64,000 bases of DNA from positions 157,343 to 221,342 of the IMG/VR virus record IMGVR_UViG_3300022866_000322. One strand, written 5' to 3'. The translations under genes and the position numbers were made by a program. Below, piece after piece: positions 1 to 18,400 of the stretch (position 1 is the stretch's first letter; every line of letters starts with the position of its first letter). The notes under the pieces are model-generated. The model saw nothing but the letters and a program-made list of their open reading frames with translations, did not search any database and was not told the origin of the DNA.

Positions 1-1004
1 TTTGCTACTGGTGTCAATCCATCAATACACATGTGCTTAGGATCGTGTAACATGTTAAAGTAATGATCATTGAACGTTTGTGTGTTTACCCACTCGCATA
101 GTTCTTCTAAGTAATAAACATTTTGTGCGTTAATGGTCATGCACACTTGTGTGGTAATTTTTCTTATGTTGCGATCACGCAGTTTATGAAAACGTCTTAT
201 GTTGTCTTCTACTTCGTTCCACTTAGCACCGTAGCGTTCGTATTCAAAACGCTTGCCTACGTTGTCGATACTGAATGCAATATCCACACGTTTAAAGTGA
301 CTCCATAACTCATACGCATCTGGCCATTGTGTACCGTTTGTGTTGTAGTGTATGTCAATGTCTTTGGCGTAGCCTTGATCTACTGCATACTGTAGCAATT
401 CAAAGTGTTCTTTGATCATAAATGGCTCACCGCCAGTGAATTCTAGATACTTGATGTTGGGTAGTAGTTCACGTAGGTTGTCCCAGAAGGCTTGTGTCTT
501 TCTTGGCCATTGTCCTTGTTGCAAGAACTTGTATGCCAAGTGGCTCTTTTTGTTCTTCAATTCGGGTATATAATCTATTTCTTCTTGTGCCCATTTACTA
601 CTGCTCCAACTTCCGCATATACGACACTTTAGGTTACAAATGTTCCCCAGCTTTAAATCCACAAACCATAATTGGTCTGGTTTGTCGTTAGCATAGTCTA
701 CTTTGTCAACAAACTCTTTTAGTCGGATCCTACTGTGTATGCGTTTGCTTGCACGGCCTGCGGCTTCTTCTTGCCAACAGCGTGTGCAGGTCTCTGGTTT
801 CTCACCATTTCTAAATTGTTGCCGTAAGTCTTGCATGTACTTGCTGTTGTATATTGTCTGCAAATTGTCTTTGTTTAAGTCATACTTTTCGCCTGACTCA
901 TCTGTTATTTCGTCTATTGCCAAACAGCAAGGTCTTGCGGATCCAATTGGACTAGCTTCTATGCTAATCCAAGGTAGCATGCATATTGTTTTAGGAAGTT
1001 CCAT
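1..1004 (-). CDS. Radical SAM protein with N-terminal twitch-like domain (partial; runs off the window edge)
   Basis: Not in the ORF track. Manual translation from the ATG at 1004 gives MELPKTICMLPWISIEASPIGSARPCCLA...CTRCWQEE...NICNLKCRICGSWSSS...FTGGEPF, open to position 1. It overlaps the upstream gene by 14 nt. Confidence 0.9.
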   Translation of the reverse strand, partial: MELPKTICMLPWISIEASPIGSARPCCLAIDEITDESGEKYDLNKDNLQTIYNSKYMQDLRQQFRNGEKPETCTRCWQEEAAGRASKRIHSRIRLKEFVDKVDYANDKPDQLWFVDLKLGNICNLKCRICGSWSSSKWAQEEIDYIPELKNKKSHLAYKFLQQGQWPRKTQAFWDNLRELLPNIKYLEFTGGEPFMIKEHFELLQYAVDQGYAKDIDIHYNTNGTQWPDAYELWSHFKRVDIAFSIDNVGKRFEYERYGAKWNEVEDNIRRFHKLRDRNIRKITTQVCMTINAQNVYYLEELCEWVNTQTFNDHYFNMLHDPKHMCIDGLTPVA

Positions 1005-2319
1005 TTAGTTCCTTGTACTCAGGGAATGTGTCCCAGAAGTTTTCGTTTCTTATAACATCTAATTTTGCAATTTGTTGCTCAAACTCAGGCCACTGCTTGT
1101 TGTTATCTTGTCCTTGTAATAAACTCAACACACTCTCATAGCCATTAATGGCACGACGTAAACTGTCCTGCGGGTCTAACCATGCAATATGTTCTTTGTA
1201 CTTGGGCGTTATAACATTCTTTTTAAATTCCGTTGTAAATATATCTGGTCTGTACCAGTCTGGTGACTGACATATATTAATATTCCAGTCTTTTGCTTCA
1301 ATTAGCCCTAACTCTACCCACTCTTTGTGAAAGTCTGGCACGTGTAGCACGTTCATTGCACTCACGGTTGCGCTTACATAAAAGTCCACATGCGGTACTT
1401 CTTTTAACATGCGTTGTCTGTTCTCAACTGTTTGTTTCCAATCTGTGCCTTTGCGCATAAGCTCTGCTCTAGCACCACTAGCATCTAAACTGGCGCCAAC
1501 ACTAACATTCGTAAAATGTTGCCAGTAATCGAATACATGTTTGTTTTTATAACGCATTTCGCTAAAGTTTGTATTGTACTGTATTCGCACATCTGTCTTA
1601 CCGTACTCTATTAGTTTGTCTAATAGATAATAATGTTCTTTCATTATAAGTGGTTCGCCACCTGCAAAATACACCTGCTCTAAATGTGGAATATGCTGTT
1701 CCATTTGTTCCAACATACTGTCTTCGTTGCCCGCAGTATACTCTACTCGTGCCATGTCCCTACCCAGTACATCTGGCTTACGATTATACAGTTTTACATG
1801 GTCATTATACCAATTACTGCTAAAGATAGGACCACAACTTCTACAGCTAAAGTTACACAGGTTACTGAACCTAACGTCCCAGTAGCGTATTTTAAAATCA
1901 TCTACAGAACCATCTGCATTAGTCTGCTCTGCTTCTGCTATGTGATGACCGTAGTTTCTGTTTGAATCGTTGCGCATACTAAATGCACCGTGTTGTTCTT
2001 GCTCGTAACACTTGGTACATTCTTTACACTCTTTACCTGCAAGCATATTTGTACGCATTGTTTTGTAATCGTCTTGATTCCATACCTCTTCCATAGTATG
2101 CTTGCGTAAGTCACCTACAGGATGCCAATAATCACTTAGACAACAAGGATATGCTCTGCCATCTGGAAATGCATGCATGTGCATCCAGGGCAACATGCAA
2201 AACGTTTTGCTGTCCATTAACAAGTCTGTTTGTTTCTCAGTCAAGTCTTCTAGTTCTGCAAAGTACGGCTTGCGACTCATGTAGTCGTAGCCTTTGTTGT
2301 AAAATTTTTTAGAGTCCAT
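991..2319 (-). CDS. Radical SAM protein, N-terminal twitch type
   Basis: FCMLPW..PCC..CTKC N-terminal Cys domain; NLCNFSCRSC (CxxxCxxC); FAGGEPL. Confidence 0.92.
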   Translation of the reverse strand: MDSKKFYNKGYDYMSRKPYFAELEDLTEKQTDLLMDSKTFCMLPWMHMHAFPDGRAYPCCLSDYWHPVGDLRKHTMEEVWNQDDYKTMRTNMLAGKECKECTKCYEQEQHGAFSMRNDSNRNYGHHIAEAEQTNADGSVDDFKIRYWDVRFSNLCNFSCRSCGPIFSSNWYNDHVKLYNRKPDVLGRDMARVEYTAGNEDSMLEQMEQHIPHLEQVYFAGGEPLIMKEHYYLLDKLIEYGKTDVRIQYNTNFSEMRYKNKHVFDYWQHFTNVSVGASLDASGARAELMRKGTDWKQTVENRQRMLKEVPHVDFYVSATVSAMNVLHVPDFHKEWVELGLIEAKDWNINICQSPDWYRPDIFTTEFKKNVITPKYKEHIAWLDPQDSLRRAINGYESVLSLLQGQDNNKQWPEFEQQIAKLDVIRNENFWDTFPEYKELNGTS

Positions 2320-3652
2320 TGTACCAATCTGCTAGTTCTGGAAAAGTCTCTGTCAAGTTCTTTCCTCTGCGTTTGTCATACTGTTCGTGAAACTGTTTAA
2401 AGTCGTTGTGTAGTTTGGGCATGTCGAATGTGTCTGAATGTGGTGTTTCTACTACATCCAAGTAATCAATTAATCGTATGATGTGGTTAATCTCATGTTC
2501 ATGCAACAACTGCCCAATTGGTCGTGCCGTTTGATAATCCAACCATGTGCGTAAACGTTCTTTGTGTTTAATTCTAATTTCTTCAGGGAACACCAACGGA
2601 CTTTGGAAACTAGGGAAGCGTAAGATATTAAGTGTAAAACTTACAGCATGTTTACCGTGTTTTGATTTCCATCCAACTAATAAATCTAAAAAGGCAGTCA
2701 GACTTTCCAAACACAATGCATTAATTGTACACATTACATGTAACCCACGCAATTTATTTCTATGTACTTTTAGTACTTTGTTTATGTTATCACACCACAG
2801 TTCCCATTCCAGGCCGTCACGTATATACTCTGCTTGTTTATCCCAACTTTCGTTGCTAGTATATAGGTCTATAGGTTGGTCTACACTGTCGAACAATCTA
2901 TCTACATCTATATCCTTACCTAAGTTACTGTTAATCGCCAAGCGTGTTTTACTCTTGCCTTTGTTTTGTTTAAACCAGTCTATAAGTTTCCAGGTGTAGC
3001 CACTCATTAGTGGTTCGCCACCTGTAATGCGTAGTTCGTCTAGCGTTCGGTGTAGGTCTGATTCCCACCACTTGAAGAACGCCTCAACATAAGGATTTTC
3101 CTCGCCGAATTTGTACAACTGCGCACTGTCATGAGCATGGGTAAAATGATTACGCCCGTCAGAAACAAGCCCAGTATAACTTCCGTTTGATTTGATATCC
3201 TTAACCCATGTACTACTAAAAGCAGGGTTGCAATAACTGCAAGCAAATTGACAAGTCCTATCGAAACTGATTTCCAAAGTTCGTAAGTCCACGTCTCCTG
3301 TTGCATCTGATTGATATGCATCGTCTAATTCCTTTATAGTATATATTTTACTTTTATACACACGGTCAGAAATGTTATCACGTTTGATATCTTCAATCTT
3401 CCAGCAGTACTCACAACCTGGCGGACGTTCTCCTGCCTGCATCTGCGCCCTGTCTTGCTTCTTTTCGGGCGTGTTGTGTATTGCTTTGGGATTACGCTTA
3501 ACTTCTTCAATATCAACTTTGTGTGCTGGTGGATGATGACAACTGGTACTCATGCCACTACCAAGCCATATAGTAGCGTTATACCATTTTGCTCCACAAA
3601 AGCTCGCTGACTTTGTGTCTAATATTTGTTGTTTAAATTCTAAATCATTCAT
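2309..3652 (-). CDS. Radical SAM protein, N-terminal twitch type
   Basis: FCGAKW..SCHHP..CEYC; RTCQFACSYC; TGGEPL. Confidence 0.92.
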   Translation of the reverse strand: MNDLEFKQQILDTKSASFCGAKWYNATIWLGSGMSTSCHHPPAHKVDIEEVKRNPKAIHNTPEKKQDRAQMQAGERPPGCEYCWKIEDIKRDNISDRVYKSKIYTIKELDDAYQSDATGDVDLRTLEISFDRTCQFACSYCNPAFSSTWVKDIKSNGSYTGLVSDGRNHFTHAHDSAQLYKFGEENPYVEAFFKWWESDLHRTLDELRITGGEPLMSGYTWKLIDWFKQNKGKSKTRLAINSNLGKDIDVDRLFDSVDQPIDLYTSNESWDKQAEYIRDGLEWELWCDNINKVLKVHRNKLRGLHVMCTINALCLESLTAFLDLLVGWKSKHGKHAVSFTLNILRFPSFQSPLVFPEEIRIKHKERLRTWLDYQTARPIGQLLHEHEINHIIRLIDYLDVVETPHSDTFDMPKLHNDFKQFHEQYDKRRGKNLTETFPELADWYNGL

Positions 3653-4911
3653 TTTAAATTATATTTTCCAAATTCGGCAACTAGCCAAGGAAAGGTTTTC
3701 CTCCAATTTATGTTTCTTCTCAAATCAATATCATTTAAAAAGTGAAACAAACTTGTTATTTCCTTGACATTCGGTTCTTTGCTGTTGCTTTGCTTTCTTA
3801 ATCCATCTAAGTAGTCTTTACTAAGCTGTTCTTCCTCTGTGTCAACAGGCTTTAATGCCAATGCCTTTTGAAAGTCTTCTTCGAATATGTTTCCGAATAT
3901 GTCTATTCTTTGATTAGTAGGATCATTTACAGAGTTTTGATACAAGTAAATCTTTCTAACCTTAGACCATTCCCTAACTTTTTCAAGTAATATAGGATAA
4001 GTTTTTATAGTCATTGGAGTAAGTGTTGAGTTAATAACTAAGTTAATATACTTCTTAGACAATATGTACAAAAAGTTTTCTTCCCATTGTTTTAAATCTA
4101 ACGGAAATCTAACATACTCGGCTTCCGGCCCCCAATTGTCCAAACTTGCTGTAACTTGAAACCCACCTATTTTTCTTTTTGCTATTAATTTCTCTACTTT
4201 ACTTATAATTTCAACTAATCTATCTTTCTTAACACTAAGATTGGTAAAAATTTGTAGTGTAAGTTTCGGACTGGGGTATTGATCAAATATATCCAAACAT
4301 TCTATAAATTCTTTTTGAAATAAAGGTTCTCCACCTAAAAAGTTAAACTGGCTTAAATTATGCCCTTCGTTCTTTAACCAATCGTATACCTTTTGCTTGT
4401 TGGCATCGAAGCTATTTGCATTCTTAAAAATTACGCCATGTCTCGAATAACTCCACTTTTGACTTGTGTATTGCCCGACATGCTTGAAGTTTTCTTCTGC
4501 CCACATAGAGCTGAAAAGTTCTGAACAGTATAGACATTTTTGATTACACAAGTTGCTGAAATAAACTTCCAACACTGTAGGTGTCACACTGGTTGCTATC
4601 GGATTGTCCTTGAGTTCAGGGGGAGTTGGGACGCCGGGCATTGCCAGATTTGTTGTTCTATCGCTCTCGCCTCCTGCTTGTTCTATGTCTCTGCAGTATT
4701 CGCATCCTTGGCCAGGCCACTTGCCTTCTAGCATCATTTCCCTTGATTTAACTTTCTCTTCTGTATTATGAAAATCAAATGTATCTAAATCAAATTCATG
4801 TCGGTTGCAACGATGACAACTTGCTGTTTCGCCTAAACTGAGATATATGGTGCTCCATCCCCATTTCAGACGGCAAGCAGTTTCTGTTTTTATAGGAAAT
4901 ATTTTATTCAT
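3649..4911 (-). CDS. Radical SAM protein, N-terminal twitch type
   Basis: ACRLKW..SCHRC..CEYC; NLCNQKCLYC; LGGEPL. Confidence 0.9.
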   Translation of the reverse strand: MNKIFPIKTETACRLKWGWSTIYLSLGETASCHRCNRHEFDLDTFDFHNTEEKVKSREMMLEGKWPGQGCEYCRDIEQAGGESDRTTNLAMPGVPTPPELKDNPIATSVTPTVLEVYFSNLCNQKCLYCSELFSSMWAEENFKHVGQYTSQKWSYSRHGVIFKNANSFDANKQKVYDWLKNEGHNLSQFNFLGGEPLFQKEFIECLDIFDQYPSPKLTLQIFTNLSVKKDRLVEIISKVEKLIAKRKIGGFQVTASLDNWGPEAEYVRFPLDLKQWEENFLYILSKKYINLVINSTLTPMTIKTYPILLEKVREWSKVRKIYLYQNSVNDPTNQRIDIFGNIFEEDFQKALALKPVDTEEEQLSKDYLDGLRKQSNSKEPNVKEITSLFHFLNDIDLRRNINWRKTFPWLVAEFGKYNLK

Positions 4912-6289
4912 TGTGTGCGTGGTACCTGCATTCTTCCCAAAACTCTTTCATTTGTGGGAACGTTGCTAAAAAGTTAGTCTTACTACGTTTGTCTTGCTCG
5001 TTAAAAAATCTATAAAAGTCTGCACGTTGCATTATAACATACTCTGGTGTTAATTTGCTACCTTCGCGCATCCAATCTAGAACTCTGTGCATACGTGCTA
5101 TTTCATAATCTTTAAATCCAACATACATGTTTTCTTCTGTTTCGCGATGTAATTCCATCCACTCTATAATGCCCGCTAACCTGTCTGCATACACAGGCGG
5201 GAGTATCTGCAAACTTTGCCAAGTTGGCTGGCGCAGTATGGGAGTGTCAAACCAAACACGTTGGTATGTATGACTCTGAGTTGCTCGTAAACGCAATATT
5301 TCTTGCAATAGATCCTGTAAACCTAATATGTTTAGATTATTCATTGTTATAATAAACGTTAAACTATTTCGGTACGGAATCTGAGTAAGGAAACTGTCAC
5401 ACCGCTTTATAATCTTCTGATAGTCTGCACCGTATCTGATATAATGTGCATGTTCTGCTATGCCAGTATCAATACTAACATACTGCATAAAGTGTTCTAT
5501 GTTGCTGTTACATAGTTTTTCTACATAATTTAAGTATTGGATCCACAACTTTTCATCTACACTAAAGTTACTGGTAACATCTATGTGCAGATCAGGCTTG
5601 GGAAACGCCAACACATAATCAAACACTTTGAATGTGTTACGATCCATAAGTGGTTCGCCGCCAGTCATCCTAAAGTGTTTTAGTTTAGGATACAGTTCGG
5701 GCCACCATTTCCAAAATGCTTCCACATACGGATTCTCTTCGCGAGCAGGGATAGGTCTACGTCTGCCTGCAAAGTGTTCCGGGGCATTGTGTGGTTTGCT
5801 GGTTGGGTATGCGCCAAATCTTTTTATTTCGTCAGCCCAAGTACTGCTAAACTGAGGGCTACAGTAACTACACTTAAGATTACAAGCGTTGTTAAAATTG
5901 ACTTCCACATAACTCGGTATTTCATCTTCATCGCCAGTGCTCTCCATTATACGGTCAAAGTGTTCTGCGGCCCAAGGCTCGCCTGAGCGATAATGTCTAT
6001 CACTAAGGTTACCCATGTCTTCTTGTGTCCAACAATAACTACATTCGTTTGGACGTTCCTGCTTGATCATTATTTTGCGTTGTTCTTTTTTGTGCTTGGT
6101 ATTGTGCAGTGCGCTAGGATTATCTTTTAGTTCAGCGGCATCTATTTGGTGCAGTGGCGGATGATAACAACTGTTGTTCAACCCTGTAGGCAAGTGCAGA
6201 CTTACCTGTTGCCATTTGGCAAGGCACATTCCGTTTCCAAGTTTGTCACGCATCTGTTCTGCGCTATTCATAAAAACTGATTTAGCCAT
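4904..6289 (-). CDS. Radical SAM protein, N-terminal twitch type
   Basis: MCLAKW..SCYHP..CSYC; NACNLKCSYC; TGGEPL. Confidence 0.92.
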   Translation of the reverse strand: MAKSVFMNSAEQMRDKLGNGMCLAKWQQVSLHLPTGLNNSCYHPPLHQIDAAELKDNPSALHNTKHKKEQRKIMIKQERPNECSYCWTQEDMGNLSDRHYRSGEPWAAEHFDRIMESTGDEDEIPSYVEVNFNNACNLKCSYCSPQFSSTWADEIKRFGAYPTSKPHNAPEHFAGRRRPIPAREENPYVEAFWKWWPELYPKLKHFRMTGGEPLMDRNTFKVFDYVLAFPKPDLHIDVTSNFSVDEKLWIQYLNYVEKLCNSNIEHFMQYVSIDTGIAEHAHYIRYGADYQKIIKRCDSFLTQIPYRNSLTFIITMNNLNILGLQDLLQEILRLRATQSHTYQRVWFDTPILRQPTWQSLQILPPVYADRLAGIIEWMELHRETEENMYVGFKDYEIARMHRVLDWMREGSKLTPEYVIMQRADFYRFFNEQDKRSKTNFLATFPQMKEFWEECRYHAHNE

Positions 6290-7245
6290 TACCAGCCTTC
6301 CTGTTTCCTAATAACACTTATCTCTGTGGTCATTACCTCAGCATTGCGTAGTGTAGCACCATAATGATGTTTGAAAAACTTGCTCTGTTGTGCATCTAGT
6401 GTAACAATAGGTAAACCTAGCCGTTTTGTGAGTGCTGTTTCTAAATTTGCGTTATGCTCCATTGGGTCGTTGTCTTTAACTGACTCCCATAACTTTTCTA
6501 ATTCAGCAAAGTCTTGTACACGCTTGTAAGGCCAGTCTTCTAACATGGTCATGTAAGTACCAAGTCGTGCGCCATACATTGCCCACACACCATTCTCAAC
6601 ATCCATGCCTACACTTTGCCAAATACACAAATGATCATAGTTGCGATTGTTTACTTTCTTTTCAAACTCTACCAGTGTTGGCTTTGCACCACGATCCAAA
6701 CACATCTTTACACCTTCTCTAAATCCTGCTCGCCATGCTTGCTTGGGTGTGCCGTTTGGGTATGTTGTACTGTAGCAGTTGTGCATTGCTATGTACTTGG
6801 GATCAAAACAAAACTCCACTGCTGTGTCGTCACTGCCATCACTGGCTTCGTGTGTTTGCATGTTGTTAACAAATGTACGTGACCAAACACTTAGTCCGCC
6901 GTTGCCGTAACGTAGTCCATTGATCGTGTTCTTAGCTTTCCAACGGAATGCGCCACCTTCGAACGCAGGTTCTATTTCCAACTGTAGGTTAAAGAAGTCA
7001 GGATCAGGTAAGTTATCACCATCGATCAGCACAAACCATTCTGTGTTGCTCAGAGCGGCTGCGGCTTTGTGTGCGGCATCTGACCCTTCTACTCCGTCAA
7101 CACGATCCGCCCAAGGTACCATGTTCTGTATTTGTATCCAGAACTCTTCCTTCTTTGGTTCGTCATAACTTAGATAGATGCAATCCAAGTCTGCTATGTC
7201 AATAATCTGTGTATCCATAATATTCTGTGTTGTTGTGGGTTTCAT
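6289..7245 (-). CDS. Glycosyltransferase-like protein (GT-A fold)
   Basis: N-terminal CIYLSYDE strand, AHKAAA helix and FVLIDGDN (DxD) motif, a typical GT-A nucleotide-sugar-binding pattern. The real start may be slightly downstream (MDTQII). Confidence 0.65.
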   Translation of the reverse strand: MKPTTTQNIMDTQIIDIADLDCIYLSYDEPKKEEFWIQIQNMVPWADRVDGVEGSDAAHKAAAALSNTEWFVLIDGDNLPDPDFFNLQLEIEPAFEGGAFRWKAKNTINGLRYGNGGLSVWSRTFVNNMQTHEASDGSDDTAVEFCFDPKYIAMHNCYSTTYPNGTPKQAWRAGFREGVKMCLDRGAKPTLVEFEKKVNNRNYDHLCIWQSVGMDVENGVWAMYGARLGTYMTMLEDWPYKRVQDFAELEKLWESVKDNDPMEHNANLETALTKRLGLPIVTLDAQQSKFFKHHYGATLRNAEVMTTEISVIRKQEGW

Positions 7246-7567
7246 CTTGCTCTAACAATAAGCCTGCGTGGTTCTTTACTACTTGAAAATCACCTTCACC
7301 GTGTACCAATTGTCTTTTATATCCTGGGTTGAACACTTTTACTTTTAGTTCACCATCTTTTACTCGTGCGTACTTGTGCATGTTTTCGTATTCGTCTTGT
7401 TCGACAACAATATAATCACCTTCAAGGTGCGGCTCAGTCATTGACTGGCCTACAATCTCTCCATTGAGATCATGGTATACTCTGTACTCCTTTACTATTT
7501 CTTTAGGAGTACCAACCAGTGCATTAACTTCTGCTAAAAACTTTTCAAGCTCGTTCATACTGTTCAA
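7199..7567 (-). CDS. Hypothetical protein within the glycosyltransferase cluster
   Basis: 122-aa ORF coupled to neighbours on both sides; no recognisable motif. Confidence 0.7.
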   Translation of the reverse strand: MNSMNELEKFLAEVNALVGTPKEIVKEYRVYHDLNGEIVGQSMTEPHLEGDYIVVEQDEYENMHKYARVKDGELKVKVFNPGYKRQLVHGEGDFQVVKNHAGLLLEQDETHNNTEYYGYTDY

Positions 7568-8402
7568 TAAGTTCTGCTGTGCACCATTCTTTTACATGAT
7601 AGTGTACAGGGTTAAGTTGATTAATGTTGTTGATCCTGATTACTGGTGGGTCTGTTTCACACATAACTGTGTCTGTCCATTTACTTGACCCTGCCCATCC
7701 TTGTATGTGTGGTTTCATATGAACAAAGTTGAAGTAATCTAAACTGGGCATTGTGCAATTTTCAACGCCATACATCTTAGCGGCAAGTGCGTATATAACA
7801 TCAGTGCTAGGACGTTCTTCCCTGCAGTTTATCAACACGTTATCTCTAATATGATTATAGTGTTTATACAAAGTGCGAGCAAGTTGGAAAAATTCAGTTG
7901 CCTCACGTGTAAATCTAAAATACATCATACCATTATAGATGTTTGGCAAGTCGTTGTCAACCCAGAACTTTCTGTATCCAGTGTCAACAACCACTTGATC
8001 CTGAAGATTCCTGCAATGCGTTGCAAGCACAACAGGTTTCAGTCTAAGTGCGTCCCACCAGTGATCCACATTGCGTGTGAACAACAAATCCGCTTCTACC
8101 TTAATTGTTTCTTTAAAAGGTGAACATGAAAATAGGTCTGGTTCACGTTCCATAGGCCAGTCAGTCGCATTTACAGTTCTAACATAATCAAACACCAGGC
8201 TCTGCTTGTCTGTAATCAACTCTTGTGTAGTTGGGTCCACTGCTACACAATATCGTGCATCGGGCATTACTAACTTTATACTAAGTGCTTGCAAGTATGC
8301 CATTTTCAAATAGTCTGCACCAATTGCCAGGGTCATGAACCCTTGCTGTTCTTTGTGATCAAACATCAAGTATTTCCTCAACAAACTCTTCAAACGCATC
8401 AC
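7545..8402 (-). CDS. Glycosyltransferase-like protein (GT-A, GT8-like)
   Basis: YLKMAYLQALSIK N-terminal helix; SPFKETIKVEADLLF (ExD variant); YNGMMYF; TDVIYALA; late HMK and HYH motifs. Confidence 0.65.
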   Translation of the reverse strand: MMRLKSLLRKYLMFDHKEQQGFMTLAIGADYLKMAYLQALSIKLVMPDARYCVAVDPTTQELITDKQSLVFDYVRTVNATDWPMEREPDLFSCSPFKETIKVEADLLFTRNVDHWWDALRLKPVVLATHCRNLQDQVVVDTGYRKFWVDNDLPNIYNGMMYFRFTREATEFFQLARTLYKHYNHIRDNVLINCREERPSTDVIYALAAKMYGVENCTMPSLDYFNFVHMKPHIQGWAGSSKWTDTVMCETDPPVIRINNINQLNPVHYHVKEWCTAELIEQYERA

Positions 8403-9204
8403 TGACTAAAAAGTTCTTGTCCATAATATGTACATTGTGCTTTGGTATGGTGATTGCTAAATCTTTGAGTCGCACAATAATCTTGTCTTTTAAATTTGTG
8501 TCCATGCGCACAACTTCTTGCACCACAGTAAACATCTTCCACGGAATAATGTTCTTAGACGTGGAACAATATCCATTTAGTATTGTGTTAGCCATAGCAA
8601 ACGAATAATCATTGCGATAACTTGTACCGTCTACCATAAACAGGTTTCTGTAATAAGCCCAGTTGCGCTGTATACGTCCTATTAGATTAAAGAACAGCTC
8701 ACTGCGTGGGCATTTTCTAAACATTACCACAGTAGCCCACAAGTAAGGCAAACTTACTTGCCCCATACGTGCTGGCATGGTTTCTGCACTACTGTTGCTG
8801 TGTTCCATAACACGATAATCATAGTCCAGTTCCATTAACTTTAATAAACCGTCGTCTAACACCAAGTAGTCTGTGTCTATCAGCAGTGTGTTATCGTATG
8901 GACTATGTTCGTATGCAGTATAACGACCGTGATTCTTCCACTGCTTTACTTCTTTAGATATATGGTCGTTTCTAAAGTTGTTGCCTGTGTAGTTGACACG
9001 CACAACATTGTCATAATTATGCTTGGGCTGTGACTCTGTGTCAGTTACTAGCGTGATAGGCAAGTTGAGATGTTGTTCTACTAACCGTGCAGAAAGGTCT
9101 GCGATACGAACATAGTCAACATCAACAGTGTTATGAGCAAAAAATACTACACCTTTAGACTCTGCGGAGTCGTCTGAGTTCATTATATTGTTGATGCCAG
9201 TCAT
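8359..9204 (-). CDS. Glycosyltransferase-like protein (GT-A, GT8-like)
   Basis: SPYDNTLLIDTDYLV (DxD); WATVVMF; RNDYSFAMA; late HIMDK. Paralogous to 7545-8402. Confidence 0.7.
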   Translation of the reverse strand: MTGINNIMNSDDSAESKGVVFFAHNTVDVDYVRIADLSARLVEQHLNLPITLVTDTESQPKHNYDNVVRVNYTGNNFRNDHISKEVKQWKNHGRYTAYEHSPYDNTLLIDTDYLVLDDGLLKLMELDYDYRVMEHSNSSAETMPARMGQVSLPYLWATVVMFRKCPRSELFFNLIGRIQRNWAYYRNLFMVDGTSYRNDYSFAMANTILNGYCSTSKNIIPWKMFTVVQEVVRMDTNLKDKIIVRLKDLAITIPKHNVHIMDKNFLVSDAFEEFVEEILDV

Positions 9205-9469
9205 TCATTACCGCTTGATATCGTTGTTGAGCTAATTCTAAGAATTCTGTTCTGTCTACTTTGATTGGATTCTCATATGTGTCTTCTAAATACAGTTCGT
9301 CACTGTTCCACGTTGCCACGAATGATATCAGGTCAGGCGTGATCTTAAACAACCCATTACCGTATGTCATGTGCAACTCTGTTTGAATGTGTTCTCTTAG
9401 TGTGCGTCTGTTGGCTTGATAGTCCGTGGCCTGCTTGATTTCTGCAACTATGTTGTCTAATTCTGTCAT
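9155..9469 (-). CDS. Small protein resembling DUF4376 tail-fibre-associated proteins
   Basis: YGNGLFKIT...LEDTYENPIKVDRTEF pattern recalled from DUF4376-type proteins; located next to fibre genes. Confidence 0.45.
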   Translation of the reverse strand: MTELDNIVAEIKQATDYQANRRTLREHIQTELHMTYGNGLFKITPDLISFVATWNSDELYLEDTYENPIKVDRTEFLELAQQRYQAVMNDWHQQYNELRRLRRV

Positions 9470-9479
9470 GGTATTATAT

Positions 9480-9519
9480 AAAAAGAATGGATAAGCATAT
9501 TATACTGCCTATCCATTCT
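9480..9519 (-). terminator. Intrinsic terminator of the tail-fibre operon
   Basis: Minus strand AGAATGGATAGGCA-GTATAATA-TGCTTATCCATTCT followed by a short T run, just after the stop at 9541. Confidence 0.7.
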
Positions 9520-9527
9520 GTTGTCAA
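9499..9527 (-). promoter_or_regulatory. Perfect-consensus sigma70 promoter driving the GT/radical SAM cassette
   Basis: The minus strand reads TTGACA (9527-9522), a 17-bp spacer, then TATAAT (9504-9499), about 30 nt upstream of the ATG at 9469. Confidence 0.9.
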
Positions 9528-9540
9528 CTACAATTAACTA

Positions 9541-10470
9541 TTAACCAATAGTTACTGAGCCCCAGACAGCAGACAAACCTGATGCTGTCTCTGGTGCTGT
9601 TACGTTTACTTTACTAACAAACTGTACATCAATGTTGTCATTGAAACTGCCGCCAGCGCCAGTAGCCGCGGCCTCAAGTGTTATTGTCCAAGTAATAATT
9701 GTGCCTACGTCACCATTTGCGCCTTGTGTACCATTTGACTTAACAGCAACTTGACAGAAGTCTGATGTGTATGGAGTGTATGCCGCACCTGACTCGTCGA
9801 CTCTTGAAATTACTTGGTTACTGGTTGTTAAATCATAATAACCAATGGTTAGATTGTTTGTGGTCTCAGTTTCGCCTGTGCCTGTACGTCCGTTGTTAGT
9901 GGTTGCTCTAAAATCTGCAACACCCCCAACTGCTGTTACCATTGATAGTGCTTGTGCGCCACGTCCTGTACCACCTGTGTTCGCACCTGCCGTTAAATCT
10001 AAATTAAGTTCGCCGCCTGCGTTAAAAAAGTAACGTGCTTGGTCTGCACTAGCAAATGTTGCTGTGCGGGTAAATGTAAATGTTGCGATACCGTCAGCAT
10101 CAACTGGATTGTGTGTTGTACCTGAATCTGTTGTGGTTGAGCCTTGTGCGTTAAAAACCAAACGATTCGTGTATGCTAGGTCAACGCCGTCATCAACACC
10201 AAGTTGGTATGCAACAATGTCACCTGTCACAACCGCAACAACACCTGTGCCTACACCAGTCTGATGTGTACGCACAATGTTCAGTTTGTTGATTACACTA
10301 GCCCACTCAGTGGCGCTGACTGTGTCACCGGCACTTTTAGTGGTTATTGCTGTTTGTCCGTAGCCTGCATCGCCGGTTCCAACAGACCAAGTTGTGTTAA
10401 GTTTGTTTCCCCCATTAATGAGAGTGTTATAATCGGCTGCTGATATGATCCCACCGGATTCGTATGCCAT
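9541..10470 (-). CDS. Virion structural protein (tail/baseplate associated)
   Basis: G/T/A-rich 309-aa protein at the end of the late fibre operon. Confidence 0.7.
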   Translation of the reverse strand: MAYESGGIISAADYNTLINGGNKLNTTWSVGTGDAGYGQTAITTKSAGDTVSATEWASVINKLNIVRTHQTGVGTGVVAVVTGDIVAYQLGVDDGVDLAYTNRLVFNAQGSTTTDSGTTHNPVDADGIATFTFTRTATFASADQARYFFNAGGELNLDLTAGANTGGTGRGAQALSMVTAVGGVADFRATTNNGRTGTGETETTNNLTIGYYDLTTSNQVISRVDESGAAYTPYTSDFCQVAVKSNGTQGANGDVGTIITWTITLEAAATGAGGSFNDNIDVQFVSKVNVTAPETASGLSAVWGSVTIG

Positions 10471-10490
10471 GTTCTACTTCCTTATGCTAT

Positions 10491-12146
10491 TTAACTATTT
10501 AGTTTCACAATGGCCTCAACTACTCCTGCGCCATCATCTAATTTATTTTCTAATGATCTTCCGATCACATTAAATGCAGTAACTTCACTCTTTGTTCCTG
10601 CACGAGCTAATCCGTTTCCTGCGGCAACTAATCGTTGCCCTTTCTTGATTGGGCCAATTACTCGAACTGGTACACGCCCGTTTACTGCAACTGGTGGATG
10701 TGTTGCATCACCACCAGCCCCACTGTTCATTAAGTATGCTGCCTTTGTACTAATAACGCCAAATACATCTTCACTTAATGCATCTGACGCCGCTGTAATT
10801 TCTTCTACACCACCTAGTGCAACAACTGTGCCTGCTGGGTATGCTGAATCACTAGCAAAACGCTCTGCCAAGTCAGCATATTGTGCTTGTAGCGAAACAC
10901 CAAAAATAGTATTAAATCGCATACCGTTACTTCCCAGGTTAACAGTATTACCCACAGTTGGGAATACTGAATTGGCAATGTAAATGTCTGTTACGTTAGC
11001 TCTTGTAGTGGCTACATTAGCACTAAACAGGTTGCCTGTAAAGCTGGTTTGGCTAATTACATTACTCCAACGGTTAGTTATGTTACCTAAAGTATATGTA
11101 ACATTTGCGGACGGGTTTACATTTGCTGTAAATGTAGTTGTTCCAACACCACCACCTAATCTTGTGTCAACATAATTCTTGGTTGCTATACTAAATCCAC
11201 TGCTTGCGGCTGTTGGATTTGCATAAACTTCTGCAAGTCCTGATGTTGCATTACCTTTAAAGAAGTTAGTATCAACACTTCCTTTGTTTAAACTGAATAT
11301 TACATCTTTGTTGTTTGTAAGTCCTTTGACATGCAATTGATCAGATGTAATTAAAATTTGTCCGTCGCTTCCTGCGCCAACTGTTAGGCCGGAATCGTTT
11401 GTTAATGATACTGCACCATTAATTGTTTGTGCTCCAACACCACCGTTTAGTATAATGTTATCAACACTAGTAGCTGAACTATCGCCTGTTCTAAATATAC
11501 CCAAAGTCGAGCTTGCGTTGCCTTGGAATGCATTGTTTGCAATTGCTGTTGATAAGTTCAATCCAGGCTTAATAGTTGCAAAACCTGCAACTGCTGTTGT
11601 AAAGTCTGATTCCTTACTCCAAATAGCAACTAGTGTGTTATCGACATAAATTTTTACAACAACATAAGTTGCACTAGGGCTTACTGCAACAATAGTATCT
11701 GGTATAGCACCCGAGTTACCTGTTGAGCTTGTTGCCGCTGGACCTACTGTAGTAAAGCTGGTTCCGTTATAAACTTTTAGTTGAAGAGTACTAGTATCCC
11801 ACCACTGTTCGCCAACTACCGGACTATTTGGTGCGCTTGCACCGCTAGACATTGTTGCTAGTGGTTTAAATGCTTGACTTGCGGCACCTTTTGTGGTTGC
11901 TGTGTTAATTTGCATTAACTTAGTTCCGGTGTCCCACCATAGTTGTCCTGGCAATGGGCCAGTCGGTGCAGATCCGTTAGCAAAGTTTTCTACTATACGT
12001 ACAACATTCTGATTTAAGAACGTGCCATATCCTGGGTAGTTTTTACCAACAAGTGTTAAACTGGTAGTTGTAGTGTCGATAGTTCCATCGGCTAAGCCTC
12101 CTGATATCAGCTCTGTACCGTTGGTTTGTGTAATATTGTATGCCAT
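10491..12146 (-). CDS. Tail fibre protein with C-terminal peptidase G2/intramolecular-chaperone-like domain
   Basis: N-terminus SLTLVGKNYPGYG..NQN..ENFA..P.GP.PGQLWWD, shared with 13656-14777. C-terminus QYADLAERF..GTVV..GG..E..V.GVIS..AAYLMN..PVAVNGRVPVRV.G...KGQRLV. Confidence 0.8.
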   Translation of the reverse strand: MAYNITQTNGTELISGGLADGTIDTTTTSLTLVGKNYPGYGTFLNQNVVRIVENFANGSAPTGPLPGQLWWDTGTKLMQINTATTKGAASQAFKPLATMSSGASAPNSPVVGEQWWDTSTLQLKVYNGTSFTTVGPAATSSTGNSGAIPDTIVAVSPSATYVVVKIYVDNTLVAIWSKESDFTTAVAGFATIKPGLNLSTAIANNAFQGNASSTLGIFRTGDSSATSVDNIILNGGVGAQTINGAVSLTNDSGLTVGAGSDGQILITSDQLHVKGLTNNKDVIFSLNKGSVDTNFFKGNATSGLAEVYANPTAASSGFSIATKNYVDTRLGGGVGTTTFTANVNPSANVTYTLGNITNRWSNVISQTSFTGNLFSANVATTRANVTDIYIANSVFPTVGNTVNLGSNGMRFNTIFGVSLQAQYADLAERFASDSAYPAGTVVALGGVEEITAASDALSEDVFGVISTKAAYLMNSGAGGDATHPPVAVNGRVPVRVIGPIKKGQRLVAAGNGLARAGTKSEVTAFNVIGRSLENKLDDGAGVVEAIVKLNS

Positions 12147-15487: not shown

Positions 15488-18400
15488 TCATGGAGTATAA
15501 CTCCTCTCTGCTTTGATGTATTCAGCCCACTCAGTGGTACTAGAATCCAGTGTATCACCAGTTCCGTATGCCTTCCATAAGTAGTCCTGTTTAATTGTTT
15601 TGCCTGTTACACTAACATTACCAGTACTAAGTACTTCACCTAGTATGTTAAGTGCGGAAACATTAGCTGTTGTTGTAGTGCCATTGATACTAACATTAGC
15701 ATTAGCAATTCTTAGGTTGCCATCAACAAAGTCTACAGCAACCACATTGGCGTTTGCTACAGTTTCAAGTATTCTAACATTTGCTGTAGGACCAGTCTGC
15801 GTTATGTAATCACCAATGTTAGCACTGATTGTGTTGTTTAACGACACACGCCATGTAACATTTGCGGCTACTTTCTTTTCACCCGTTAGTGAGTTGGTTG
15901 TTGCTAGTGCTATGTTTGGTAACTGCTGTGCCAATGAGCTATCAACTACACGAGCATTGGCATAGTGTACGTTTGCACCAGTGCCGTCAACTCCTCTGCG
16001 CAACTGTGAAATTGTGTTGGCAAATACCTGCTTAACGTTTGATGTGTTGATGTATGCGTTAGCATTAGCAAACACATTTCCTAATACTAGGAAAACATTA
16101 CTGCTGTATGTAATCAAACTATCTGTTGCAAACTCAGTGTTGGCTGTCCAAACATCAGCACTGAGCATTTTAGCATCATCATACTTCTGGTAGTAGTAAA
16201 TCAATTCACCGTTGATGAATACCTCACCTGGTGAACCACCGACTCCAGTGCCTGGATCTGGTAGCAAGGCAGCGTTGTCAACAAATATGTTAACATCGTC
16301 AAGAGCCAAGTTAGCAGTAAGTGTTGTTGTACTGTTTGCACTTATTCGGTAGTAACTTCTGTCACGGTCCATTGGTTCAAACACTCTAAAGCCATAACTT
16401 GCAGTGTTTGACGCTGTATTAGTAAACACACGCATTTCAAGTGTGTCATACATTCTACCCGGAACTAGTTCTTCTGGTGCATGACTATTGTAAGCATCTA
16501 AGTAGAAACCACCAGCAATGTTAATGTCCTCTGGTCTAGTTCCTAGTGCGGTGTCTGTGTAAAAACTTGCAATGTTGCTGTCAAGTAAGTCGTCAATGTA
16601 CAAGTTACTGATCTTAACATTAGCAGTACCGGAACCTAACACATCCATAACATTAGCAGTAGTTGCAACACCATTTACGCGAACAACATTAGCATCAAGT
16701 TCTAAGAAACCTTGCTTTTCTTGGATAACTGCAATTTCTTTTACACTAGTATAGTTGTTCAACACTCTTGCGTTTGCAGTTGAATTAGTCTGAGTAATGT
16801 AGTCGCCTTCGTTTGCACTTATACTTTCACCTAACGACAACGTCACAATACTTTCGATCGGTTGCCCACTTAGCATCATTTCATCACGTGACACGCTTAC
16901 TACTCTGAACGTTGCATTGTTCTCAAAATTGAAGGTTTCGTACATGCCCTCAATTTTAATAGGATCATTTAGATTAAAGCCACGGTCAACGAAGTCTACC
17001 TGTTGTGTGTTTGCACTAGTAATCTTATGACCTGTGTAGTTGAATCCAATTACATTGCTCGTTAAGGTAAAGCTGTTAGATGTAAACGTCTCTCCACTTA
17101 TTTTATTACCAGGATAACTTGTACCAAACATCAATTGATTGATGTCTTTGCCTGGTCTTCCAAAACTTGGAACATAGTAACTGGTTATTCTATCTGCGGC
17201 ACTAAGCAATACATTACCGCTATCAATTTCTGTAAAGCGTGTAAAGTCAAACACTGTCTGCGAACTTACATTTGCGTTTGTAGCCAAGTATGCTGTGTTG
17301 TTGTAGAATATAATGTTGCCACTTGTGATATACAAGTTGCCGTCTATTTGTGTAATTCCGTTGCTGTTGAAATCATACTGTTGTACAAAGTTGCCTACGT
17401 CATCTGCTACAAACAAGCGTGTACCGTCGTGTCTCATGTACAAGCCAGTTGGATTAGTTGCATTCAAGTCTGCTGAATTATTAAGTGTAGCAGTTGAGAT
17501 ATCCCATGCCGTTGAAAGTGTATAACTCCATATCTTGTTATACTGCTGTCCAGTTACAAACAGTTCTTTACCATCTTCTCTGAAGCGCATACCTGTTGGA
17601 ATATTTTCTTCGCTAGCCACGCTCTTGCTTCGTGTGCTGTATGTTGCACTGCTTGCTAACCACGGAATGCTAAGTTCATATTCAAACACTGTGTCATTTG
17701 CTGTGCCTAACACGTACATTCTTGTGCCGTCTGTACTGAATTCAACACTAGTTGCACTTGTTTCTTGGCTGTTAATGCTTACAACACTGATGTTAGCGGC
17801 TGTATTAACAAACCAAGGAGTAGCAAGTCTGTACTCGTAAACGCTGTTACTTGTATCCCCAACAGTGTACATGCGAGATCCGTCTTCTCTAAAGAACAAA
17901 CCTTGCACACTGGTGTCTTGAACATTAACATTAGCTACAGCAACGTTGCTTGCCGTTGTAACTTCCCATGGTGTACCTAGTGTGTACTCATACACACTGT
18001 TTGATGTGTCGCCTGCGATATACATTTTAGTACCGTCAGGTTTGAAAAATACATCTGTAATAGTAGTATCTTGTGGAGCAACATTTGCATTGCCGTCAAG
18101 TTCTATTCTGTTCAAGTCATAGCTGTTTGCAAAGTTGCCATTTACTACAACAGTATCTTCGTATGCAACATTCGCGGTCCATTGTGCTACATTACTGGTG
18201 TAGGTTATTCTATCAAATTTAATTGTGCTGTCTATGCTTCTAACAGTGTTGTATCCACCTTGGCTATCAAACTCACTGTTTAACATTGCATACGCTGTTG
18301 CACCCTCACCTGTGCCGTTAATTACCACGTTTGGTGTAGTAGTGTATCCTGATCCTGCCTTTGTAACAGTAATACTAGTTACAGTTCCATCAGCGGCACT

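What the first reader, a model, noticed from the sequence alone, without database searches (positions are those of the whole stretch)
1..9469. Independent operon of at least five N-twitch radical SAM enzymes plus three glycosyltransferases
Seen: at least ten translationally coupled genes behind one perfect sigma70 promoter: a DUF4376-like gene, three GT-A-like genes, one unknown and five radical SAM paralogues, continuing off the window. Each rSAM has its auxiliary Cys domain N-terminal to CxxxCxxC. Established: this inverted layout corresponds to the functionally uncharacterised N-terminal-twitch rSAM family (N_Twi_rSAM), and twitch rSAMs such as BtrN oxidise sugar substrates. Inference: a phage glycan build-and-tailor pathway, with GTs adding sugars and several rSAMs oxidising, epimerising or cross-linking them. 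The target could be virion proteins, phage DNA or the host surface.
Basis: partly seen in the sequence, partly recalled or inferred. Interest (0 to 1): 0.78.

Follow-up and report, generated by a model that had tools for sequence, protein, structure and literature searches.

The report
Phage glycosyltransferase and radical-SAM tailoring operon
A jumbo phage from a salt lake carries a conserved operon of three sugar-adding enzymes and seven uncharacterised radical enzymes next to its tail-fibre genes, and bacterial relatives of two of its parts sit together in peptide-modifying gene clusters, so it most likely decorates a protein with chemically tailored sugars of an undescribed kind.

Summary
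Ten overlapping minus-strand genes (9469 to 1) follow a perfect TTGACA-17-TATAAT promoter. Five are N_Twi_rSAM members (218-410 bits, cutoff 170).

The source contig continues the operon to about 21 genes. These add two more rSAMs (seven in all), two SGNH-like proteins and a NodU-type carbamoyltransferase.

- g8 has a confident GT8 (glycogenin/LgtC) fold and g9 is its paralogue.
- g6 is a virus-dominated GT-A-like family with an invariant DGD.
- The "DUF4376-like" label for g10 is not supported.

Gene order fibre-g10-g9-g8-(g7)-g6-rSAM array is kept in about 70 viral contigs. It is also kept in cultured Ralstonia phage RsoM2USA. All three GT genes were present in 29 of 33 loci fetched by rSAM. 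An rSAM followed g6 in 21 of 21 loci fetched by g6.

New lead: in bacteria the g6 domain is fused to GT1 enzymes. These fusions sit in clusters with double-glycine-leader peptides and C39 exporters. Two such clusters also carry N-terminal-twitch rSAMs.

No operon protein has a membrane segment, and thymidylate synthase is canonical.

Best reading: a soluble, protein-directed glycosylation and radical-tailoring pathway, probably acting on tail fibres. The rSAM chemistry and the acceptor are inferred, not shown.

The parts
9499..9527 (-). Sigma-70-type promoter TTGACA-17-TATAAT in front of g10
   Evidence: Perfect 12/12 match. There are 2 in the window against 0.04 expected. Conserved at 10/12 or better in 32 of 48 related loci.
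9484..9519 (-). 14-bp hairpin followed by a T-run. It is the likely terminator of the upstream tail-fibre gene and holds the -10 element in its loop.
   Evidence: Terminator scan and sequence read. Function is inferred.
9155..9469 (-). g10, 104 aa, unknown function. It always lies between the fibre gene and g9.
   Evidence: No Pfam, NCBIfam or PDB match. Conserved at 30-63% identity. Present in RsoM2USA as gene 354.
8359..9204 (-). g9, 281 aa, GT8-like glycosyltransferase and paralogue of g8. D110-x-D112 is invariant.
   Evidence: hhalign against g8 gives probability 98.8%, E 4e-17. Invariant columns.
7545..8402 (-). g8, 285 aa, retaining-type GT-A glycosyltransferase of GT8/GT24 architecture. 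Its E103-x-D105 lies at the DxD position.
   Evidence: Model pLDDT 91.7. Foldseek hits to glycogenin, LgtC, UGGT and LARGE1 at E 3e-9, with 166 hits at E<=1e-3. Profile hit to glycogenin at E 9e-5, with ExD aligned on DxD. Viral GT8-like hits.
7932..7960 (-). Second perfect promoter-like site, inside g8. Probably a by-product of the codons for the conserved FDDNxLPDVYNG motif.
   Evidence: It is perfect only in this phage and scores 7-11 of 12 in orthologues.
7199..7567 (-). g7, 122 aa, unknown function, variably present. It has a conserved C-terminal E-Y-Y.
   Evidence: No family hits.
6289..7245 (-). g6, 318 aa. N-terminal GT-A-like domain with invariant D75-G-D77 and a helical C-terminal domain. 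It is the best conserved gene of the module and always lies next to rA.
   Evidence: Alignment A1 at 62-78% identity. Model pLDDT 78. Matches are all GT-A or NDP-sugar transferases: Z up to 7.9, and AFDB GT2-like at E 8e-4. Atlas neighbour cluster named 'Glycosyltransferase 2-like'. Bacterial relatives are fused to GT1 enzymes.
4904..6289 (-). rA, 461 aa, N_Twi_rSAM
   Evidence: NF033640 at 306 bits. Cys 22, 41, 83, 86, then C136xxxCxxC.
3649..4911 (-). rB, 420 aa, N_Twi_rSAM. This paralogue is variably present.
   Evidence: NF033640 at 218 bits. Present in few relatives.
2309..3652 (-). rC, 447 aa, N_Twi_rSAM
   Evidence: NF033640 at 295 bits. 51% identical orthologue in RsoM2USA.
991..2319 (-). 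rD, 442 aa, N_Twi_rSAM. This is the paralogue closest to the bacterial members.
   Evidence: NF033640 at 410 bits. Tree. Bacterial homologues.
1..1004 (-). rE, N_Twi_rSAM. The first 334 of its 401 codons lie in the window and the gene runs off the window end.
   Evidence: Full length in L029 at 357 bits.
9541..12146 (-). Two tail-fibre-like genes (309 and 551 aa) directly upstream. They are the proposed acceptors.
   Evidence: Ser/Thr/Gly/Ala/Asn-rich. Weak Peptidase_G2 intramolecular-chaperone hit in the 551-aa protein. A fibre homologue precedes the module in relatives and in RsoM2USA. The acceptor role is inferred.

Best explanation
The region is the first half of an operon of about 18 kb and about 21 genes in an uncultivated jumbo myovirus. 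The operon encodes a soluble, cytoplasmic pathway that glycosylates a ribosomally made acceptor and then tailors the product by radical chemistry.

Proposed steps:
1. g6 puts the first sugar on the acceptor. It is a virus-dominated GT-A family whose bacterial relatives are the C-terminal half of GT1 fusion enzymes in leader-peptide clusters.
2. The two glycogenin-like GT8 enzymes, g8 and g9, extend it.
3. Seven anciently diverged N-terminal-twitch radical SAM paralogues each carry out a distinct hydrogen-abstraction step. This could be oxidation, epimerisation, deoxygenation or cross-linking, on the sugars or on nearby residues. Their fully Cys-ligated auxiliary cluster, as in BtrN, would serve as the electron relay.
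4. SGNH-like enzymes and a NodU/TobZ-type carbamoyltransferase add or trim O-acyl and O-carbamoyl groups.
5. A nearby 4,6-dehydratase-like SDR and a DegT aminotransferase could supply a 4-amino-4,6-dideoxy sugar.

The most likely acceptor is the phage's own tail-fibre protein set, encoded immediately upstream.

Shown: gene content, folds, family membership, conserved synteny, and the bacterial co-occurrence. Inferred: the order of steps, the chemistry of each rSAM, and the identity of the acceptor.
For: -
- The BtrN twitch domain aligns to the phage rSAM N-terminus with all four ligand Cys conserved.
- Synteny is conserved across about 70 viral contigs while g8 and g9 have diverged to 30-55% identity. 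All three GT genes were found in 29 of 33 rSAM-fetched loci, and an rSAM array in 21 of 21 g6-fetched loci. Arrays hold 5-8 rSAMs.
- The minimal module fibre-g10-g9-g8-x-g6-rA is intact in cultured Ralstonia phage RsoM2USA. That phage also has a second locus, SGNH-rC-SGNH-SGNH-carbamoyltransferase.
- Each paralogue family forms its own well-supported clade, so the paralogues are old and individually maintained.
- About 15 representative clusters at 50% identity are GT1-plus-g6-domain fusions. In the bacterial loci examined, these lie beside double-glycine-leader peptides and Peptidase_C39 ABC exporters. Two such loci, L258 and L261, also carry N-terminal-twitch rSAMs that match the rD profile over its full length at 283-316 bits.
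- No operon protein has a transmembrane segment.
- A sugar aminotransferase and a dehydratase-like SDR lie nearby.
- Relatives at about 90% identity occur in metatranscriptome assemblies.
Against: - No member of N_Twi_rSAM or of the g6 family has been characterised. No paper on them was found.
- No leader-type precursor peptide exists in any phage locus. The best hit was E 2.2 among 35,008 stop-to-stop segments. No C39 protease or exporter is present, so the bacterial analogy is only partial.
- Most bacterial N_Twi_rSAM genes are single genes in mixed contexts: ketosynthases, GT2, GT-C and unrelated genes.
- g6's GT-A assignment is of moderate strength (PDB Z<8, Foldseek PDB E 4e-3), and neither g6, g8 nor g9 hits any Pfam GT model.
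- A sigma-70-type promoter may mean early expression rather than expression with the late structural genes.
- Adjacency to fibre genes could reflect shared genome architecture by descent.
- RNA-library presence does not prove transcription.
Confidence: 0.5

Rival explanations
1. The operon makes and tailors nucleotide sugars or a free oligosaccharide or pseudo-oligosaccharide, that is, a small molecule. The rSAMs would act like BtrN, NeoN, AprD4 or DesII on sugar or aminocyclitol substrates. The product would be used on the host envelope or released.
For: - BtrN is the closest solved relative of the twitch domain.
- A TobZ/NodU-family carbamoyltransferase, a DegT aminotransferase and a dehydratase-like SDR are present.
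- Some bacterial N_Twi_rSAM genes lie next to GT2 or GT-C genes, or next to ketosynthases.
Against: - No sugar-phosphate cyclase, flippase, polymerase, initiating phosphoglycosyl transferase or any membrane protein is present.
- g6-domain relatives sit in peptide clusters.
- The kinase and nucleotidyltransferase pair is a generic, widespread phage module. At least 600 viral stretches matched, and most of the loci read in full lacked the GT genes and the rSAM array.
Confidence: 0.17
2. It is a phage-borne RiPP pathway. A small phage protein such as g10 or g7 would be the substrate. It would be glycosylated and radical-modified into a bioactive peptide, for example an anti-competitor, anti-defence or host-manipulating factor.
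For: - Bacterial clusters combine the g6 domain, N-terminal-twitch rSAMs, leader peptides and C39 exporters.
- g10 is strictly linked to the module, and g7 has a conserved C-terminal E-Y-Y.
Against: - No leader-like sequence is found in phage loci.
- g10 and g7 are conserved evenly along their length, like folded proteins. They contain no Cys and show no leader/core split.
- There is no protease or exporter, and g7 is often absent.
Confidence: 0.13
3. The operon hypermodifies phage DNA, with glycosylated and/or carbamoylated bases further altered by rSAM enzymes, to evade host restriction.
For: - Phage DNA glycosylation and rSAM steps in thymidine hypermodification are established precedents (own knowledge).
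- The sigma-70-type promoter is compatible with early expression.
- All the enzymes are soluble.
- A dCMP deaminase and ThyA/DHFR lie next to the operon.
Against: - ThyA passes the thymidylate synthase equivalog cutoffs (374 bits against 327) and is paired with DHFR, so dTMP synthesis is canonical.
- No hydroxymethylase, 5-hmdU DNA kinase-type or DpdA-type gene was seen in the 84 kb examined.
- GT8 enzymes are not known DNA glycosyltransferases.
- g6 relatives are peptide-associated.
- The module is linked to fibre genes, not to replication genes.
Confidence: 0.08
4. The three GTs and the rSAM array are functionally unrelated neighbours that travel together only through shared descent in one phage lineage.
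For: - All cluster-bearing contigs are related phages, so synteny is not independent evidence.
- In RsoM2USA part of the array (rC, SGNH, carbamoyltransferase) lies about 90 kb away from the GT genes.
Against: - Order is kept while the proteins diverge to 30-40% identity.
- The g6-rA adjacency survives the split in RsoM2USA.
- The g6 domain and N-terminal-twitch rSAMs co-occur independently in bacterial chromosomes.
Confidence: 0.07

Closest known systems
BtrN (butirosin 2-deoxy-scyllo-inosamine dehydrogenase), the founding twitch-domain radical SAM enzyme
   Same: It has a CX3CX2C radical SAM core plus a twitch domain. The four Cys ligands of BtrN's twitch domain (spacing C-x18-C-x43-C-x2-C) align with invariant Cys of the phage enzymes. 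The fully ligated auxiliary cluster points to an electron-relay role.
   Different: In the phage enzymes the twitch domain is N-terminal, not C-terminal. They are about 150 aa longer, with an uncharacterised C-terminal region. The sequence match is confined to the twitch domain (E 1.4e-6). The substrate is unknown.
NCBIfam NF033640 N_Twi_rSAM (twitch domain-containing radical SAM protein)
   Same: rA, rB, rC, rD, rE and rG all score above the curated cutoff over the full model.
   Different: The family has no characterised member. Bacterial members are mostly single genes. Here 5-8 diverged paralogues stand in tandem. rF falls below the cutoff (92 bits).
GT8 glycosyltransferases (glycogenin, LgtC) and the viral GT8-like enzymes of giant viruses
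   Same: g8 has the GT-A fold and its metal-binding acidic motif aligns with that of glycogenin. Viral GT8-like structures also match.
   Different: There is no hit to any Pfam GT model. g8 has ExD instead of DxD. Identity to glycogenin is about 15%. Donor and acceptor are unknown.
Virus-encoded virion glycosylation: mycobacteriophage capsid and tail glycosylation, Mimivirus fibril glycans with 4-amino-4,6-dideoxy sugars, chlorovirus capsid glycans (own knowledge)
   Same: The GT genes are virus-encoded and lie beside structural genes. The virus has its own dehydratase and aminotransferase pair for an amino-deoxy sugar.
   Different: None of those systems is known to contain radical SAM enzymes, let alone an array of seven. 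Virion glycosylation has not been demonstrated here.
Glycocin-type RiPP clusters (SunS/GccA peptide glycosyltransferases with double-glycine leaders and C39 exporters)
   Same: Bacterial relatives of g6 lie with leader peptides, C39 ABC exporters and HlyD-like proteins. SunS appears among weak structural matches of g6.
   Different: The bacterial enzymes are GT1-plus-g6-domain fusions, not GT2 SunS-type enzymes, and some clusters add N-terminal-twitch rSAMs. The phage operon has no leader peptide, protease or exporter.

Membership tests
N_Twi_rSAM (NF033640) | Full-length HMM score above the curated cutoff of 170 bits | tested here: met
   rA 306, rB 218, rC 295, rD 410, rE 357 (full length) and rG 299.5 bits. 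rF scores only 92 bits and is not a member by this test.
N_Twi_rSAM (NF033640) | Radical SAM CX3CX2C motif and GGE SAM-binding motif | tested here: met
   Present in all seven paralogues.
N_Twi_rSAM (NF033640) | Twitch (single auxiliary 4Fe-4S) domain placed N-terminal to the radical SAM core | tested here: met
   Profile positions 9-81 align with the BtrN twitch domain at E 1.4e-6, with all four ligand Cys matched. The Pfam SPASM hit is N-terminal in rD and rE.
N_Twi_rSAM (NF033640) | Reductive SAM cleavage and cluster content | not testable with these tools
   Needs anaerobic biochemistry and EPR or Moessbauer spectroscopy.
GT8 glycosyltransferases (for g8 and g9) | GT-A fold of GT8/GT24 type | tested here: met
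   g8 model pLDDT 91.7. Glycogenin, LgtC, UGGT and LARGE1 match at E down to 3e-9 with probability 1. g9 is linked by hhalign at probability 98.8%.
GT8 glycosyltransferases (for g8 and g9) | DxD metal and nucleotide-sugar binding motif | tested here: inconclusive
   g9 has an invariant DxD. g8 has an invariant ExD that aligns on the glycogenin DxD.
GT8 glycosyltransferases (for g8 and g9) | Match to the Pfam/CAZy sequence model | tested here: not met
   No Pfam or NCBIfam family at E<=0.01. Only a profile-to-PDB hit at E 9e-5.
GT-A / GT2-like glycosyltransferases (for g6) | Nucleotide-diphospho-sugar transferase fold with DxD after the fourth strand | tested here: inconclusive
   D75-G-D77 is invariant. 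All named structural matches are GT-A or NDP-sugar transferases, but they are moderate: PDB Z<=7.9, Foldseek PDB E 4e-3, AFDB GT2-like E 8e-4 with TM 0.44. No Pfam hit.
DUF4376 (for g10) | Match to PF14301-type model | tested here: not met
   No hit in g10 or in any of 24 orthologues at E<=1.
RiPP biosynthetic cluster | Leader-bearing precursor peptide gene | tested here: not met
   A leader HMM built from 11 bacterial precursors finds nothing in the phage loci (best E 2.2).
RiPP biosynthetic cluster | Leader protease or exporter (C39 ABC) | tested here: not met
   No such Pfam domain and no transmembrane segment in the operon.
RiPP biosynthetic cluster | Maturase homologues found in bona fide RiPP clusters | tested here: met
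   The g6 domain and N-terminal-twitch rSAMs lie in bacterial clusters with precursors and C39 exporters.
Phage DNA hypermodification system | Pyrimidine hydroxymethylase or base-exchange enzyme feeding the modification | tested here: not met
   ThyA meets the thymidylate synthase equivalog cutoffs and lies next to DHFR. Only 84 kb of the 221 kb contig was read.
Virus-encoded virion glycosylation | Glycan present on virion proteins | not testable with these tools
   Needs virion glycoproteomics. RsoM2USA is a cultured candidate.

The most novel reading that the evidence does not exclude
A widespread lineage of jumbo phages matures its tail fibres, or another phage protein, with a pathway inherited from or shared with a bacterial glycopeptide RiPP system. 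Sugars would be attached by a new peptide or protein glycosyltransferase family (g6) and by glycogenin-like enzymes. They would then be rewritten by up to eight dedicated N-terminal-twitch radical SAM enzymes. That would be a virion post-translational modification, and a radical glycan or glycopeptide chemistry, with no described counterpart.
Probability: 0.3. Interest if true: 0.9.

Novelty: new variant of a known kind. Interest (0 to 1): 0.72.

Why it matters
- N_Twi_rSAM is a sizeable radical SAM family with no known reaction. The rD search alone scored more than 6,400 related proteins. Here the family appears as five to eight conserved paralogues locked to glycosyltransferases, which gives a concrete and testable context.
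- A cultured phage, RsoM2USA, carries a two-rSAM minimal version.
- Bacterial clusters supply candidate peptide substrates.
- If the acceptor is the tail fibre, this would be a new layer of phage receptor-binding biology: shielding, stability or host range.
- It would also be a source of new radical carbohydrate or peptide chemistry.

Tried and rejected
- **Nucleotide search in cultured phages.** Megablast of the region against 50,697 phage records found nothing.
- **PADLOC.** Not run.
- **PHROGs.** Gave only generic "radical SAM" labels, plus one unknown family for g8.
- **Profile searches against PDB.** The g6, g9 and g10 profiles gave nothing significant.
- **Atlas search of u392.** Uninformative.
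- **Bacterial neighbourhoods of N_Twi_rSAM.** In 69 loci there was no common neighbour. The idea that bacterial context alone would give the function was dropped.
- **kin154 and NT149 as sugar-activating enzymes.** Rejected as specific evidence. The pair is a generic phage module found in at least 600 viral stretches, often with a carbamoyltransferase but without the rest of the operon.
- **Internal perfect promoter in g8.** Probably a coding by-product.
- **T4-type late motif TATAAATA.** It occurs four times in the window. My own estimate, not a tool result, is about eight chance occurrences, so no timing inference was drawn.
- **Metatranscriptome contigs.** They show relatives at about 90% identity, but they cannot prove transcription or map a start site.
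- **Correction.** An early note said eight rSAMs. The correct count is seven.

Full report
**What is in the sequence.** Between window positions 9469 and 1, ten minus-strand ORFs follow one another, and every junction overlaps by 1-50 nt for the longest ORFs. They are:
- g10 (104 aa), g9 (281 aa), g8 (285 aa), g7 (122 aa) and g6 (318 aa);
- the radical SAM genes rA (461 aa), rB (420 aa), rC (447 aa), rD (442 aa) and rE (cut by the window end).

A perfect TTGACA-17-TATAAT lies at 9527->9499, 29 nt before g10. Only two perfect matches exist in 64 kb, where 0.04 are expected. The -10 element sits in the loop of a 14-bp hairpin followed by a T-run. That hairpin looks like the terminator of the upstream fibre gene. 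A site with at least 10 of 12 matches is found upstream of g10 in 32 of 48 distinct related loci. The second perfect site lies inside g8. It coincides with the codons of a conserved peptide motif and is perfect only in this phage, so I treat it as a probable coding by-product.

**The radical SAM genes.** All five in-window proteins exceed the curated cutoff of NCBIfam NF033640 (N_Twi_rSAM, 170 bits), at 218-410 bits. They are only 21-31% identical to one another. Each has four N-terminal Cys, a CX3CX2C motif and a GGE motif. A profile of the family matches the C-terminal twitch domain of BtrN at E 1.4e-6. The alignment puts the four auxiliary-cluster Cys of BtrN on the invariant phage Cys. I found no paper that characterises the family.

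**Beyond the window.** The window is the last 64 kb of a 221-kb IMG/VR contig. Locus L029 shows that the operon continues with:
- the rest of rE (401 aa);
- rF, which is divergent at 92 bits and below the cutoff;
- rG, at 299.5 bits;
- a 392-aa unknown protein;
- a 270-aa SGNH-like protein and a DUF6071/SGNH protein;
- a NodU/TobZ-type carbamoyltransferase and a 218-aa unknown protein;
- a P-loop kinase and a cytidylyltransferase-like protein.

There are thus seven rSAMs, six of them above the family cutoff. The kinase and nucleotidyltransferase pair is a generic phage module. It was found in at least 600 viral stretches, often with a carbamoyltransferase and without the rest of the operon, so I do not count it as specific evidence. 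Just past the operon lie a dCMP deaminase, a second g6-like protein without DxD, a DegT-family sugar aminotransferase, a 4,6-dehydratase-like SDR, a thymidylate synthase that passes the equivalog cutoffs, and DHFR.

**The GT-like genes.**
- g8: the model is confident (pLDDT 91.7). It matches glycogenin, LgtC, UGGT and LARGE1, with 166 PDB chains at E<=1e-3 and a best E of 3e-9. A sequence profile hits glycogenin at E 9e-5, and g8's invariant ExD aligns on glycogenin's DxD.
- g9: a paralogue of g8 (hhalign probability 98.8%) with an invariant DxD.
- g6: a separate family. It is the best conserved gene of the module, at 62-78% identity. It has an invariant DGD, an N-terminal alpha/beta domain and a helical C-terminal domain. 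All its named structural matches are GT-A or NDP-sugar transferases, but only at moderate strength.
- None of the three hits a Pfam GT model.
- g10 shows no DUF4376 signal in any of 24 orthologues.

**What kind of phage.** The major capsid protein is 64-70% identical to those of jumbo myoviruses such as PA5oct, Serratia BF and Sinorhizobium Phosso. The window also carries portal, baseplate and fibre genes. The DNA occurs in at least 14 salt-lake metagenome runs.

**Do GT and rSAM genes travel together?** Yes.
- Of 33 loci fetched through rD that show at least 6 kb upstream of the first rSAM, 29 carry g6, g8 and g9. The four exceptions are distant loci with one to three rSAMs.
- All 21 loci fetched through g6 with at least 5 kb downstream carry rSAMs right after g6.
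- Complete arrays hold 5-8 rSAMs.
- The order fibre-g10-g9-g8-(g7)-g6-rA-rC-rD-rE-rG-u392-SGNH-carbamoyltransferase is kept while g8 and g9 diverge to 30-55% identity.
- In a tree, each paralogue family forms its own clade, so the array is old. The grouping of bacterial members with rD is partly due to how they were fetched.
- The only cultured carrier found is Ralstonia phage RsoM2USA. It keeps fibre-g10-g9-g8-x-g6-rA at 217-223 kb, and SGNH-rC-SGNH-SGNH-carbamoyltransferase at 123-129 kb. All these genes are annotated as hypothetical and are not discussed in its paper.

**The bacterial lead.** Most bacterial N_Twi_rSAM genes are single genes in mixed contexts, and no neighbour is shared across them. 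A profile search with g6 found 1,424 protein clusters at E<=1e-3. About 15 of the 150 best representative clusters (50% identity) are 715-810-aa proteins with a GT1 (GT-B) domain in front of the g6 domain. Eight such loci were read:
- Five distinct clusters carry a Peptidase_C39 ABC exporter (the near-identical L262 and L263 count as one).
- Most carry short ORFs with double-glycine leaders, a consensus of LL-G ... L-S/T-x-E-E-L ... G-G, usually followed by Y-G.
- Six carry a conserved protein of about 230 aa.
- Two, L258 and the chromosomal L261, also carry rSAMs with the N-terminal four-Cys twitch pattern. These match my rD profile over its full length at 283-316 bits.

This is an independent, non-phage co-occurrence of the g6 domain with N-terminal-twitch rSAMs, in what are plainly peptide-modifying clusters. 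It shifts the likely acceptor from "a glycan somewhere" to a ribosomally made peptide or protein. It also leaves open whether the rSAMs attack sugars or residues.

**Limits of that analogy.** The phage loci contain no leader-type peptide (best E 2.2 in 35,008 segments), no protease and no exporter. No operon protein has a transmembrane segment. g10 and g7 look like folded proteins, not like leader/core peptides. The phage system therefore probably recognises a full-length protein. The fibre genes directly upstream are the obvious candidates, because that linkage is kept even in RsoM2USA. This step is inference.

**Rivals.** The rival readings are a small-molecule or nucleotide-sugar pathway, a true phage RiPP, DNA hypermodification, and mere co-inheritance. 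Each is scored in its own section.
- DNA modification is weakened by the canonical ThyA/DHFR pair and by the peptide association of g6.
- Host-surface polysaccharide synthesis is weakened by the absence of any membrane component.

**Verdict.** The glycan build-and-tailor reading is partly supported, and is sharpened towards protein-directed glycosylation with radical tailoring. The system is a new variant of virus-encoded glycosylation and of rSAM-assisted peptide maturation. It is built on two uncharacterised families and is testable in a cultured phage.

Noticed in passing
L258:1-13376, L261:1200-11250, L256:9390-15809, L260:4876-11984, L264:377-5724: Bacterial clusters that look like an undescribed glycosylated RiPP family. 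They hold one to five precursor ORFs with double-glycine leaders and cores that usually begin Y-G. They also hold one or two GT1-plus-g6-domain fusion enzymes, a conserved ~230-aa protein (weak GT64 hit), a HlyD-like protein and a C39 ABC exporter. Two of them carry N-terminal-twitch rSAMs.
   Followed up: partly
window 15488-29647 (-): A single ORF of 4,719 aa between the baseplate and fibre genes, with FG-GAP and beta-propeller hits. It is presumably a giant structural or adhesin protein.
   Followed up: partly
window 9484-9527 (-): Promoter and terminator are superimposed. The -10 hexamer lies in the loop of a 14-bp hairpin followed by a T-run, so one element could both end the fibre transcript and start the operon transcript.
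   Followed up: partly
L029:19821-20891 and L176-L255: A P-loop kinase plus cytidylyltransferase-like pair at 70-80% identity occurs in at least 600 viral stretches, often next to a carbamoyltransferase. Its function is unknown. NAD salvage or sugar activation are possibilities.
   Followed up: partly
L176:12120-13994 (+): A 625-aa protein whose C-terminal 250 aa is a g6-like domain without the DxD. Its N-terminal part carries three copies of a F-x-F/Y-S-W-H-P-D-like motif.
   Followed up: no
L176:13972-16057 (-): A DegT/PseC-like sugar aminotransferase and a 4,6-dehydratase-like SDR lie beside ThyA and DHFR. The pair is conserved at 56-57% identity in contig L205. It would make an NDP-4-amino-4,6-dideoxyhexose.
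   Followed up: partly
L097, L099, L100, L102-L104, L159, L161: Contigs carrying the full phage module are filed in GTDB under MAGs of Legionellales, Verrucomicrobia, Betaproteobacteria, Rickettsiales and Haliscomenobacter. These are probably mis-binned phage contigs. A 2.5-kb Polynucleobacter MAG contig (L096) is 72% identical in rD.
   Followed up: no
window 10491-12146 (-): The 551-aa fibre protein has a weak C-terminal hit to the Peptidase_G2 intramolecular-chaperone autocleavage domain (E 3e-5, just below the Pfam cutoff).
   Followed up: no
window 47896, 47928, 51931, 56299: T4-type late-promoter-like TATAAATA motifs, three of them 9-44 nt before head-module genes. The count is not above chance.
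   Followed up: partly
window 4600-9600: Contigs about 90% identical to g10-rA occur in marine and salt-marsh metatranscriptome assemblies. Two 151-nt contigs in a seawater RNA run match g10 exactly. DNA carry-over cannot be excluded.
   Followed up: partly
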